A model generated the notes under the pieces. The model was not told the origin of the DNA. It worked only from the letters and a program-made list of their open reading frames with translations, and made no database searches. DNA of 63,712 nt, counting the filler, from Octopus bimaculoides (taxonomy: Eukaryota): assembly GCF_001194135.2 (NCBI RefSeq). It is 6 parts of 6 records of this genome, joined end to end, with 100 filler letters (N's around TTAATTAATTAA, not from the genome) between each part and the next. Parts side by side here need not be neighbours in the genome. Positions count along the whole stretch, not along the records: positions 21,854 to 52,265 come from NC_069010.1; 5 more parts are not named here. One strand, given 5' to 3'. Position numbers and translations under genes: made by a program. Positions 43,950 through 45,001 of the stretch are shown here, one piece after another. Each line of letters begins with the position of its first letter. Positions within the stretch are counted from its first letter, which is position 1.

Positions 43950-44252
43950 CCCCAGAAAGTATGAAAAATGGATAATATTTCTTTCAAACTTTGCTTGTCT
44001 TATAATATTTATTCAAACTCCAAAGAATGCCCTTCAAAACATGGCTATGATGCTTCCCCCACTACTCCTCCTCCTCATGAGAGATGCACATATTATCAGC
44101 CACCAAGGGAAATGCTCAAATAATTAAGGCCAAGCAACTGACAAGCAAATCTGTGCTATTGAGTAGAATGTTTCAGTTCTATATTTAAGAGATGAGGAAT
44201 TATGTACATCATTTACATTTGATGGATATTTGTCCTCATCTTGTTTGCTGTT

Positions 44253-44298
44253 AACACAACGTTTCGGCTGATATACCCTCCAGTCTTCTTCAGGTGTC
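44253..44298 (-). ncRNA. Minimal type I hammerhead, core intact
   Basis: GACAC-CUGAAGA-A-GACUG(10 nt)CAGCC-GAAAC-GUU-GUGUU; helix I 5 bp, helix II 4/5, palindrome AACGUU. Confidence 0.75.
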
Positions 44299-44770
44299 TT
44301 GGAGAAATTTCGAACTTGGGTTCTCATTCCTAAGGTATTTTTCGATGTTATTATTATTCAGGTCACTGCCTGGAATTGAACTCGGAATCTTGGGGTTAGT
44401 AGCCCGCACTCTTAACCACTATGCCGTATGCCTGTGGACATATGGCGTAGTGGTTAAGAGTGTGGGCTATTAATCCCAAGATTCCGAGTTCGATTCCAGG
44501 CAGTGACCTGAATAATNNNNNNNNNNNNNNNNNNNNNNNNNNNNNNNNNNNNNNNNNNNNNNNNNNNNNNNNNNNNNNNNNNNNNNNNNNNNNNNNNNNN
44601 NNNNNNNNNNNNNNNNNNNNNNNNNNNNNNNNNNNNNNNNNNNNNNNNNNNNNNNNNNNNNNNNNNNNNNNNNNNNNNNNNNNNNNNNNNNNNNGATGAT
44701 GATGATGATGATGATAATAATAATAATAATGATAATAATAAAGATGATGATAATAATAATAATAATGATG

Positions 44771-44816
<46 letters not shown>

Positions 44817-44874
44817 CAATAACAACATCAAAAAATACCTTAGGAATGAAAACCCAGGTTTGAAATTTCCCCAA

Positions 44875-44920
44875 GACACCTGATAAAGGCTGGAGGGTAT
44901 ATCAGCCGAAATGTTGTGTT
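44875..44920 (+). ncRNA. Minimal type I hammerhead, mutated copy
   Basis: GACAC-CUGAUAA-A-GGCUG(10 nt)CAGCC-GAAAU-GUU-GUGUU; G8 to A and C15.2 to U. Confidence 0.6.
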
Positions 44921-45001
44921 AACAACAAACAAGATGAGGACAAATATCCGTCAAATGTAAATAATGTAAATAATGTAGCTGAATGTTTGTTATAACAATA
45001 T

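What the first reader, a model, noticed from the sequence alone, without database searches (positions are those of the whole stretch)
44173..44978. Palindromic tRNA-promoter plus hammerhead element: candidate Pol III 'retrozyme-SINE'
Seen: a near-perfect ~800-bp inverted repeat centred at ~44434. Each arm reads outward as a tRNA-like head (A-box, CT-ACT-AA anticodon-like loop in the left arm, B-box), an (AAT)n linker, a short spacer and a minimal type I HHR. In the resolved sequence there is no T4 run between head and cleavage site, so the left arm would give an ~180-nt RNA ending at GUU (44258); part of the right arm is an N gap. The two HHR copies carry different mutations, and their consensus is an intact CUGAUGA/GGCUG:CAGCC/GAAACGUU core. 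Established: Penelope-like pLTRs and retrozymes carry minimal HHRs whose palindromic helix III works in dimers; an extra A between A9 and G10.1 is tolerated in the CChMVd viroid hammerhead. Inference: a SINE whose 3' end is made by self-cleavage instead of a Pol III terminator, mobilised by Penelope RT, with the head-to-head pair providing two same-sense RNAs able to form the dimeric ribozyme. I do not know of this architecture being described.
Basis: partly seen in the sequence, partly recalled or inferred. Interest (0 to 1): 0.9.

Follow-up and report, generated by a model that had tools for sequence, protein, structure and literature searches.

The report
Octopus SINE pair with Penelope-type hammerhead
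Two copies of a short tRNA-derived mobile element, each carrying a decayed Penelope-style hammerhead ribozyme motif, were inserted head-to-head in one event in an octopus genome; this looks like a by-product of Penelope-type integration, not a new ribozyme-terminated gene.

Summary
The inverted repeat is real. Arms of about 235-260 nt are 91-92% alike and centred at 44434. The gap lies inside an (AAT/GAT)n microsatellite and hides no unique sequence. The host is Octopus bimaculoides or a close relative.

Each arm has a 72-73 nt tRNA-derived head with A and B boxes at canonical tRNA positions, an (AAT)n linker, and a ~150-nt body. The body carries a minimal type I hammerhead with the Penelope-like element (PLE) hallmarks. 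The left motif passes a min-HHR descriptor that found nothing in 40 Mb of random sequence. The right one has G8->A.

New here: paralogous empty sites show a 12-bp target-site duplication around the whole palindrome (44174-44976), so it is one insertion. Both copies reach tRNA position +1. Only the left copy has a 25-nt 3' "tail".

TSD, head-to-head copies and a one-sided tail are published PLE insertion signatures. The best reading is a Pol III SINE copied by a PLE enzyme priming from both nicked strands.

Both copies run 59-84 nt past the predicted cleavage site, so cleavage did not make the 3' end. tRNA-SINE plus hammerhead is already known (Schistosoma Sm-alpha).

No other copy could be retrieved, so family-level claims are untested.

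The parts
44162..44173 (+). Left copy of the 12-bp target-site duplication, AGTAGAATGTTT
   Evidence: Alignment A1: two paralogous uninterrupted sites (45181-45210 and 50036-50060) carry a single GAGCAGAATATTTGCT. In the filled site this stretch is present on both sides of the palindrome.
44174..44198 (-). 25-nt 3' 'tail' extension, present only on the left copy (sense UCCUCAUCUCUUAAAUAUAGAACUG)
   Evidence: Arm homology ends at 44199, while the right copy abuts its TSD. UCCUCAUCU (44190-98) pairs with the internal AGAUGAGGA (44233-41). The fold has z = -3.3. An optional one-sided tail of 30-40 bp is a PLE signature.
44199..44347 (-). Body of the left SINE copy (tRNA-unrelated, contains the hammerhead motif)
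   Evidence: 91% identical to 44826-44976 read on the other strand.
44253..44298 (-). Left minimal type I hammerhead motif. Helix I 44298-94 / 44257-53; CUGAAGA 44293-87; extra A 44286; helix II 44285-81 / 44270-66 (A.C mismatch at 10.2-11.2); GAAA 44265-62; C15.2 G16.2 U16.1 at 44261-59; U17 at 44258
   Evidence: Only descriptor hit in the piece. No hits in 40 Mb of random sequence. Catalytic core complete.
44348..44360 (-). Short (AAT)3 linker of the left copy
44361..44432 (-). tRNA-derived head of the left copy (A box CGGCATAGTGG, B box AGTTCAATTCC, both CpG-decayed)
44433..44435 (.). 3-nt filler (TGT) at the head-to-head junction
   Evidence: Alignment. The repeat finder gives 8 nt when no indel is allowed.
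44436..44508 (+). tRNA-derived head of the right copy, 73 nt. It starts at tRNA position 1 (T8, G10, A14, G53TTCGA58, C61 at canonical numbers). A box 44443-53, B box 44487-97
   Evidence: Not called as a tRNA by ARAGORN or Rfam.
44509..44825 (+). Expanded (AAT)n/(GAT)n/(AAC)n linker of the right copy, including the assembly gap at 44517-44694
   Evidence: Collinear with the left copy across the gap.
44826..44976 (+). Body of the right SINE copy. It ends ...AAATAATGT directly at the TSD, with no tail
44875..44920 (+). Right hammerhead motif, inactivated. CUGAUAA has G8->A at 44885 and C15.2->U at 44912 (CpG decay). Helix II GGCUG/CAGCC is perfect. U17 at 44915
44977..44988 (+). Right copy of the 12-bp target-site duplication, AGCTGAATGTTT
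   Evidence: Alignment A1.

Best explanation
The stretch 44174-44976 is the product of a single retrotransposition event in an Octopus (bimaculoides-like) genome. It consists of two full-length, oppositely oriented copies of one short non-autonomous element, joined head-to-head with their 3' ends pointing outward and flanked by a 12-bp target-site duplication.

The element is a tRNA-derived SINE with three parts. The first is a 72-73 nt head that begins at tRNA position +1 and keeps the internal Pol III A and B boxes. The second is an (AAT)n linker. The third is a ~150-nt body that imitates the region a Penelope-like element (PLE) enzyme uses: a Penelope-type minimal hammerhead, followed ~60-85 nt downstream by a stem-loop in which reverse transcription starts.

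Proposed mechanism:
1. Pol III transcribes the element from its internal promoter and runs into flanking DNA, because the element has no T4 terminator.
2. A PLE RT/GIY-YIG endonuclease binds the 3' module and nicks both strands of an AT-rich target 12 bp apart.
3. It primes reverse transcription from both nicks. One cDNA starts at the distal RNA site (the left copy, with the 25-nt tail). The other starts at the proximal site (the right copy, no tail).
4. Both cDNAs run to the 5' end of the RNA and are joined with 3 nt of filler, giving the palindrome.

The hammerhead is inherited as part of the PLE-mimicking module. It was not used to make the 3' end of the copied RNAs. Both copies have since decayed: about 4.5% each, with G8A on the right and a helix II mismatch on the left.

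Shown: the anatomy, the TSD and empty sites, and that the motif is not a chance match.
Inferred: Pol III transcription, PLE dependence, priming from both strands, and the two start sites.
For: 1. One event. The left and right flanks align collinearly to two uninterrupted paralogous sites with a 12-nt overlap that is duplicated in the filled site. The two TSD copies differ at 2 of 12 positions, and the arms differ at 8.6%.

2. Both arms stop at the same nucleotide, tRNA position +1. T8, G10, A14, G53TTCGA58 and C61 fall at canonical numbers. This is as expected if both cDNAs reached the 5' end of a Pol III transcript.

3. The min-HHR is not chance. The left motif is the only descriptor hit in 30 kb, there are none in 40 Mb of random sequence, and a relaxed scan finds only the two arms. 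[quoted passage not shown] That paper also saw paired min-HHRs 100-700 bp apart on opposite strands. Here they are 657 bp apart.

4. PLE insertion signatures from the literature: an inverted copy adjacent at the 5' end, an optional 30-40 bp tail at one end only, short TSDs, and trouble in short-read assemblies (PMC8557442; PMC3846280). The purified PLE protein cleaves and extends both DNA strands. It starts reverse transcription at two internal sites ~85-92 nt past the HHR cut, and the tail is the sequence between them. HHR cleavage is dispensable for insertion (PMC11167929).

5. The tail completes a 9-bp stem with internal SINE sequence, z = -3.3.

6. The host is Octopus. Octopus genomes hold abundant SINEs and recently active Penelope families (PMC13282606).
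Against: - Only this one locus is available. There is no other copy in the 30-kb piece. None was found in viral or metagenome collections or among predicted proteins. Neither a family nor a consensus is demonstrated.
- No octopus PLE sequence could be compared with the 3' module.
- The tail is 25 nt, not 30-40, and its SINE origin rests on a 9-bp complementarity.
- The 3' end carries a short tandem duplication (ATGTAAATA x2), which is more typical of some LINE-partnered SINEs.
- Rfam's hammerhead and tRNA models do not score the motifs.
- Nothing here shows transcription or cleavage.
Confidence: 0.6

Rival explanations
1. This is a Pol III 'retrozyme-SINE' whose RNA 3' end is generated by hammerhead self-cleavage at GUU instead of a terminator. 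The head-to-head pair is the functional unit, because it supplies two same-sense RNAs that form the dimeric ribozyme.
For: The motif is a genuine min-HHR-like sequence. No T4 run lies between the head and the cleavage site or anywhere in the element. PLE-type HHRs are thought to act as dimers.
Against: Both genomic copies extend 59-84 nt beyond U17 and share that sequence, so the copied RNAs were uncleaved. The two motifs are on opposite strands, so no single transcript holds both in sense, and trans pairing would be only 4 bp (ACGU). Absence of an internal T4 run is normal for SINEs. In vitro, PLE HHR mutants insert normally and no RNA ends map to the HHR site. The TSD around the whole palindrome explains the pairing as an integration product.
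Confidence: 0.08
2. An ordinary LINE-dependent tRNA-SINE (for example with a CR1, L2, RTE or R4 partner). The hammerhead-like motif would have no link to Penelope. The inverted dimer would have arisen by a rare twin-priming or template-switch accident during LINE-mediated TPRT.
For: LINEs are the most abundant TE order in octopus. The 3' end has a short tandem duplication of a 9-mer, as in some stringent-type LINE/SINE tails. TSDs of 12 bp fit LINE TPRT as well.
Against: The motif's PLE-specific details were not forced by any search. Chance expectation is below about 2e-3 per piece. Classical twin priming, from established knowledge of L1 and not checked here, inverts one part of an element and would not be expected to yield two full-length copies. 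The one-sided tail that completes a stem is unexplained by LINE TPRT.
Confidence: 0.15
3. Not a SINE. It would be a pair of inverted solo pseudo-LTRs left by a 5'-truncated insertion of an autonomous Penelope-like element whose pLTR happens to contain a tRNA-derived segment.
For: Inverted pLTR pairs of ~200 bp with a TSD and a one-sided tail are described for PLEs. HHRs lie in pLTRs. Most dispersed min-HHRs are thought to be truncated PLEs.
Against: Both arms end at exactly the same nucleotide, which coincides with tRNA position +1 and sits the canonical distance upstream of the A and B boxes. Random 5' truncation would not be expected to do this twice. There is no PLE coding sequence on either side.
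Confidence: 0.14
4. Assembly artefact: a false palindrome made by a short-read assembler joining two SINE copies.
For: The assembly is gap-rich (9 N runs in 30 kb) and one gap lies inside the element. PLE-type structures are known to upset short-read assemblies.
Against: The arms differ at 8.6% of positions, so they are distinct copies. The junction at 44431-44438 is in uninterrupted sequence and lies at the element boundary, not inside shared repeat sequence. The outer flanks are the two halves of one paralog-verified target site with a TSD.
Confidence: 0.03

Closest known systems
Minimal hammerheads (min-HHR) of Penelope-like elements (Cervera & de la Pena 2014, PMC4209133)
   Same: Type I topology. 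CUGANGA/GAAA core. An unpaired nucleotide between A9 and G10.1. The G10.1-C11.1 pair. No loop 3, with a palindromic A-C-G-U. Short helix I (5 bp). Occurrence as pairs a few hundred bp apart on opposite strands.
   Different: Here the motif is not in a recognisable pLTR next to an RT/EN ORF. It sits in the body of a ~240-nt element with a tRNA-derived Pol III head. Helix II is 5-6 bp, against 7-8 in the Schistosoma families. Activity was not tested, and both copies are mutated.
Sm-alpha / Sj-alpha SINE-like retroposons of Schistosoma (Ferbeyre 1998; Laha 2000; as summarised in PMC2770079 and PMC6765202)
   Same: A tRNA-derived (tRNA-Gln) Pol III promoter module followed by a hammerhead ribozyme in a short non-autonomous retroposon.
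   Different: The Sm-alpha motif is recognised by the Rfam hammerhead sequence, while this one is not scored by the Rfam models. Sm-alpha copies often sit in repetitive arrays whose multimeric transcripts are cut into units. Here there is a minimal PLE-type HHR, an inverted (not tandem) pair, and copies that extend past the cleavage site.
PLE insertion architecture (Arkhipova 2013 PMC3846280; Craig 2021 PMC8557442; Frangieh 2024 PMC11167929)
   Same: An inverted copy abutting the 5' end, a short TSD around the whole complex, an optional short 'tail' at one end only, reverse-transcription start tens of nt downstream of the HHR, and gaps in short-read assemblies.
   Different: Both arms here are complete copies of a short non-coding element, not a full element plus a 5'-truncated inverted pLTR. 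The tail is 25 nt and the TSD 12 bp, against 30-40 nt and 8-10 bp reported.
Metazoan non-LTR retrozymes (Cervera & de la Pena 2020 PMC7229834; Li et al. 2026 bioRxiv 10.64898/2026.07.22.740005)
   Same: Short non-coding elements with type I hammerheads, proposed to depend on PLE enzymes.
   Different: Retrozymes are head-to-tail tandem repeats expressed as circRNAs, with a classical type I HHR in each unit and no tRNA head. This locus is an inverted pair with one minimal HHR per unit and a Pol III head.

Membership tests
Hammerhead ribozyme, type I (catalytic core) | C3 U4 G5 A6 N7 G8 A9 ... G12 A13 A14 A15.1 ... U16.1 H17 all present | tested here: met
   The left copy has every core nucleotide (CUGAAGA, GAAA, U16.1, U17). 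The right copy fails at G8 (A at 44885).
Hammerhead ribozyme, type I (Rfam covariance models) | Scores against an Rfam hammerhead model | tested here: not met
   No hammerhead hit at E<=10, even on the 851-nt stretch alone. This is expected for a motif with no helix III loop, so it argues against a canonical HHR, not against a min-HHR.
Hammerhead ribozyme | Self-cleavage at H17 | not testable with these tools
   Needs in-vitro transcription or 3'-end mapping. Published PLE min-HHRs cleave poorly and only as dimers or with protein.
PLE minimal hammerhead (min-HHR) | [quoted passage not shown] | tested here: met
   An A at 44286 (left) and at 44887 (right). Listed as a hallmark in PMC4209133.
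PLE minimal hammerhead (min-HHR) | G10.1-C11.1 pair, and no helix III loop with palindromic 15.2-16.2 | tested here: met
   G:C closes helix II in both copies. The left copy has A-C-G-U. The right has A-U-G-U after CpG decay.
PLE minimal hammerhead (min-HHR) | Located in the pseudo-LTR / pLTR-ORF junction of a Penelope-like element | not testable with these tools
   There is no PLE ORF in the piece and no octopus PLE DNA could be retrieved.
tRNA-derived SINE (SINE2) | Internal Pol III A and B boxes at tRNA spacing at the 5' end of the unit | tested here: met
   TGGCGTAGTGG and AGTTCGATTCC are 44 nt apart. The unit starts at tRNA position 1.
tRNA-derived SINE (SINE2) | Head recognisable as a tRNA (cloverleaf) | tested here: not met
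   ARAGORN finds nothing at default or -ps settings, even on a CpG-restored consensus. Rfam tRNA gives no hit. This is common for SINE heads, and the parent tRNA species could not be determined.
tRNA-derived SINE (SINE2) | Short, non-coding, flanked by a target-site duplication | tested here: met
   About 235-260 nt per copy. A 12-bp TSD was verified with two paralogous empty sites, though it flanks a dimer.
tRNA-derived SINE (SINE2) | Dispersed multi-copy family | tested here: inconclusive
   There are two copies at one locus and none elsewhere in 30 kb. Scans of viral and metagenome contigs and a protein-space search were empty. No octopus genome was available.
tRNA-derived SINE (SINE2) | 3' region shared with the autonomous partner | not testable with these tools
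   Needs octopus Penelope and LINE consensus sequences.
PLE-type insertion | Inverted copy adjacent at the 5' end, giving head-to-head inverted repeats inside one TSD | tested here: met
   compared with the descriptions.
PLE-type insertion | Optional 30-40 bp tail at one end only | tested here: met
   A 25-nt extension (44174-44198) on the left copy only. It is slightly shorter than published (literature).
Non-LTR retrozyme | Head-to-tail tandem repeats, each with a type I HHR, so that a unit can be excised and circularised | tested here: not met
   The two units are inverted, not tandem, and one transcript cannot contain two sense HHRs.

The most novel reading that the evidence does not exclude
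Octopods may harbour a family of tRNA-headed SINEs whose partner is a Penelope-like element and not a LINE. Their 3' module would copy the PLE's HHR-to-initiation-stem-loop region, and their insertions would frequently be head-to-head dimers with a one-sided tail. That would be a natural genomic record of the both-strand priming and dual internal start sites so far seen only in vitro with one lizard PLE. It would add a new SINE-partner class and explain part of the 'dispersed min-HHRs' in animal genomes.
Probability: 0.4. Interest if true: 0.62.

Novelty: new variant of a known kind. Interest (0 to 1): 0.5.

Why it matters
SINEs are usually defined as LINE-dependent. In the searchable literature I found no tRNA-headed SINE tied explicitly to Penelope-like enzymes by insertion signatures.

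If a family survey confirms the reading, this element would give three things:
- a compact natural substrate of about 240 nt that marks which RNA features a PLE enzyme needs;
- in-vivo support for PLE priming from both target strands and from two RNA start sites;
- an explanation for some of the thousands of orphan minimal hammerheads in invertebrate genomes.

It would also argue that the hammerhead in such elements is a passenger or recognition feature and does not make the 3' end.

If not confirmed, the locus remains a well-documented example of a single-event inverted SINE dimer.

Tried and rejected
1. Rfam scans. One covered the whole piece and one the 851-nt region at E<=10. Neither gave a tRNA or hammerhead hit. 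The 'miRNA' hits at 44367-44500 only reflect the palindrome hairpin. The many mir-297/466 hits are TG/TA microsatellites.

2. ARAGORN on the piece, on both heads and on CpG-restored consensus heads. Nothing at normal thresholds.

3. Search for more copies. All of these were empty:
- blastn within the piece;
- an exact-pattern scan of viral contigs;
- two scans of metagenome contigs, one with a head pattern and one with an HHR pattern;
- a protein-space search with the open frame that runs through the SINE.

4. A TE ORF at 48839-49132(-) identified the host as Octopus. The octopus proteins are UniRef-only and have no DNA attached. The best contig-bearing relative (ENA, L001) has neither this SINE nor the abundant octopus SINE, so it could not serve as same-genome sequence.

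5. Separate TSDs for each copy, by eye on the sequence only. I saw no direct repeat flanking either copy alone. Only the outer pair matches, which speaks against two independent insertions.

6. DNA-level inverted duplication of one arm from the other. Rejected because the left arm has a 25-nt tail that the right arm lacks, and because the boundaries coincide exactly with the element ends.

7. The bacterial promoter/terminator scan is irrelevant to a eukaryotic locus.

8. Ferbeyre 1998 and Lunse 2017 are not held in the library. Their content is cited only through reviews.
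Full report
OBSERVATION

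The inverted repeat exists. The repeat finder reports arm pairs 44199-44358 / 44815-44974 (160 nt, 91%) and 44353-44430 / 44439-44516 (78 nt, 92%), and blastn agrees. A global alignment gives 19 differences in 221 aligned positions, 8 of them CpG-decay type, with a JC distance of 0.091. These are two diverged copies, not a near-perfect palindrome. With a 1-nt indel the homology continues to GG at 44431-32 and 44436-37, leaving a 3-nt centre (TGT, 44433-35).

The gap was tested first. The left arm reads continuously from head through CCTGAATAATAATAACATCG into the body. In the right arm the gap (44517-44694) is bounded by ...CCTGAATAAT on one side and by (GAT)n(AAT)n...AACAACATCA on the other. 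All unique left-arm positions have partners, so the gap lies inside an expanded microsatellite. Only its length is unknown.

HOST

A TE-derived ORF at 48839-49132(-) matches 17 Octopus bimaculoides proteins at 71-95% identity. The window is therefore from O. bimaculoides or a close relative.

ANATOMY OF ONE COPY

The right copy starts at 44436 with GGACATA-T-GGCGTAGTGG. Counted from that G, the bases T8, G10, A14, G53-T-T-C-G-A58 and C61 all fall at canonical tRNA positions. The A box (44443-53) and B box (44487-97) are 44 nt apart, and the tRNA-like module is 73 nt long. Neither ARAGORN nor Rfam calls a tRNA, even on a CpG-restored consensus. This is a tRNA-derived promoter module, not a tRNA gene.

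After the head come an (AAT)n linker (3 units on the left, hundreds of bases on the right) and a ~150-nt body.

In the body the left copy reads GACAC-CUGAAGA-A-GACUG-GAGGGUAUAU-CAGCC-GAAA-C-G-U-U|GUGUU, with U17 at 44258. Its catalytic core is complete and there is one A.C mismatch in helix II. The right copy has CUGAUAA (G8->A at 44885), a perfect GGCUG/CAGCC helix II, and GAAAUGUU (CpG decay of C15.2).

Neither copy contains a run of four or more T in sense orientation. The first downstream runs are at 44039 (left) and 45372 (right).

IS THE HAMMERHEAD MORE THAN CHANCE?

Rfam's models give nothing, which is expected for a motif without a helix III loop. I wrote a descriptor following Cervera & de la Pena:
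- CUGANGA;
- 0-1 extra nucleotide;
- helix II of at least 4 bp closed by G10.1:C11.1, with at most one mismatch;
- GAAA;
- a 15.2:16.2 pair, U16.1 and H17;
- helix I of at least 4 bp.

This finds only the left motif in the 30-kb piece on both strands. It finds nothing in 40 Mb of first-order Markov sequence on both strands. That puts the expectation below about 2e-3 per piece. Allowing one core mismatch adds only the right motif.

The motif also carries features that the 2014 paper lists as emergent hallmarks of Penelope-like-element (PLE) minimal hammerheads: a nucleotide between 9 and 10.1, the G10.1-C11.1 pair, a palindromic 15.2-16.2 without loop 3, and a helix I of 4-5 bp (PMC4209133). 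That paper also noted paired min-HHRs 100-700 bp apart on opposite strands. Here the two U17 positions are 657 bp apart.

THE KEY NEW RESULT: ONE INSERTION EVENT

The left flank (44009-44173) has a paralogue at 49891-50057. The right flank belongs to a ~209-bp tandem repeat whose next unit starts near 45186.

In alignment A1 both paralogues read straight through ...GGTAT(C/T)GAGCAGAATATTTGCT(A/G)TA.... At the filled site the left flank ends ...ATTGAGTAGAATGTTT (44173). The right flank begins AGCTGAATGTTT-GTTATAAC (44977-). So a 12-nt stretch is duplicated, AGTAGAATGTTT on the left and AGCTGAATGTTT on the right, where the paralogues have AGCAGAATATTT. This target-site duplication brackets the whole palindrome, 44174-44976.

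I saw no repeat flanking either copy alone. That check was by eye, not scripted.

The right copy ends ...AAATAATGT directly at its TSD. The left copy has 25 extra nucleotides (44174-44198; sense UCCUCAUCUCUUAAAUAUAGAACUG). The first nine of these pair with the internal AGAUGAGGA (44233-41), closing a stem-loop. The minimum free energy is -17 kcal/mol against -8.6 +/- 2.5 for shuffles, z = -3.3.

WHAT IT MOST LIKELY IS

These features match published PLE insertion signatures.
- Arkhipova et al. describe units bounded by inverted pLTRs, with 8-10 bp TSDs and a 31-bp tail on one inverted pLTR. They also show that pLTRs suffice to mobilise unrelated sequence in trans (PMC3846280).
- Frangieh et al. 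show that a purified PLE protein cleaves and extends both DNA strands. Reverse transcription starts at two adjacent internal RNA sites in a stem-loop ~85-92 nt past the HHR cut. The tail is the sequence between those sites and is a signature unique to PLEs. HHR mutants insert normally, and no RNA ends map to the HHR site (PMC11167929).

At this locus the copy ends lie 59-61 nt (no tail) and 84 nt (with tail) past U17. Octopus genomes contain abundant SINEs (11.6% in O. vulgaris) and about 30 recently active Penelope families (PMC13282606).

My best explanation (confidence 0.6) is therefore as follows. The element is a Pol III-transcribed tRNA-SINE whose 3' module mimics the PLE HHR-to-initiation-stem-loop region. 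A PLE enzyme copied it, priming from both nicks of a 12-bp staggered cut, once from the distal and once from the proximal RNA start site. Both cDNAs ran to the RNA 5' end at tRNA +1 and were joined.

The single-event origin of the palindrome I regard as close to certain. Pol III transcription, PLE dependence and dual-strand priming are inferences.

WHAT IS NOT SUPPORTED

The sequence contradicts this. Both copies share 59+ nt beyond U17, so the templates were uncleaved.

The idea that the palindrome exists to provide two same-sense RNAs for a dimeric ribozyme is also weak. The motifs are on opposite strands, and trans pairing would be a 4-bp ACGU helix. ViennaRNA shows that the 46-nt motif folds into helices I and II on its own for the right copy and for the inferred ancestor (about -12 kcal/mol), but not for the left copy. 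This says nothing about catalysis.

Absence of an internal T4 run is ordinary for SINEs.

The 'intact consensus' is only partly inferable. GAAACGUU is polarised by CpG decay, and the other three differences are not. The left copy's core is already complete in any case.

COMPARISON WITH KNOWN SYSTEMS

The architecture of a tRNA-derived Pol III head plus a hammerhead in a SINE-like retroposon is already known from Schistosoma Sm-alpha and Sj-alpha (PMC2770079; PMC6765202). Those are found in repetitive arrays whose multimeric transcripts are cleaved into units.

Non-LTR retrozymes are tandem, circRNA-forming and lack a tRNA head (PMC7229834; bioRxiv 10.64898/2026.07.22.740005; PMC7761336). The tandem criterion is not met here.

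I found no paper describing a tRNA-headed SINE with a PLE-type minimal HHR and PLE insertion signatures, nor any hammerhead report for octopus. A literature search is not proof of absence, and Repbase and Dfam could not be consulted.

I rate the finding as a new variant of a known kind.

LIMITS

Everything rests on one locus. No further copy could be retrieved (L001 is not octopus). The existence of a family, its consensus HHR, the frequency of dimers and tails, and similarity to an octopus Penelope are all untested. A genome-wide survey would settle them quickly.

VERDICT

Interest is 0.5. It is a tidy and mechanistically informative locus with a plausible but unproven link between SINEs and Penelope-like elements. 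It is not the categorically new ribozyme-terminated gene that was proposed.

Noticed in passing
window 44977-45394, 49891-50057 and 45877-45903: A ~209-bp unit is repeated in tandem just right of the palindrome (two units, 84-92% alike). Partial paralogues lie 5 kb downstream and at 45877. The SINE dimer inserted into one unit, and these paralogues served as empty sites. The nature of the repeat (satellite or TE fragment) is unknown.
   Followed up: partly
window 45366-45480: A degenerate interstitial telomere-like array, (TTAGGG)n with period-6 consensus TTAGGG and 65-85% matches, immediately after the 209-bp repeats.
   Followed up: no
window 46035-46326 and 46481-46998: Tandem arrays (periods 142 and 224 nt, 90-94% matches) of a different repeat containing ...GGCGAGCTGGCAGAAACGTTAGCACGCC.... 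It looks like an abundant octopus SINE arranged head-to-tail. It gives a spurious 137-aa ORF at 46199-46612(-).
   Followed up: no
window 48839-49132 (-): A 97-aa ORF with no Pfam domain has 17 O. bimaculoides paralogues (71-95% identity) and many ~65% relatives on Mb-scale ENA contigs. It is probably the conserved C-terminal piece of an unclassified retroelement protein. It served here only to identify the host.
   Followed up: partly
window 44367-44500: A transcript crossing the palindrome would fold into a long, ~91% paired hairpin. Rfam 'miRNA' hits (MIR4414, E = 6e-9; mir-734) at the centre are due to this hairpin alone. Such inverted SINE pairs are typical dsRNA substrates for RNA editing or silencing, which is of note in a cephalopod.
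   Followed up: no
window 44300-44330 (-) and 44845-44872 (+): The body upstream of the hammerhead contains CCCAAGTTCGAAATTTC, which resembles the head's CCCAAG...GAGTTCGATTCC (B-box region). This may be a remnant of a second tRNA-like unit, or chance.
   Followed up: no
window 21854-52265 generally (e.g. 37230-37680, 38400-38530, 42150-43090, 51550-52265): The piece is dominated by TG/TA-type microsatellites and has 9 assembly gaps. The microsatellites produce dozens of sub-threshold Rfam hits to mir-297, mir-466 and similar families, and long spurious ORFs. None is evidence of a gene.
   Followed up: no
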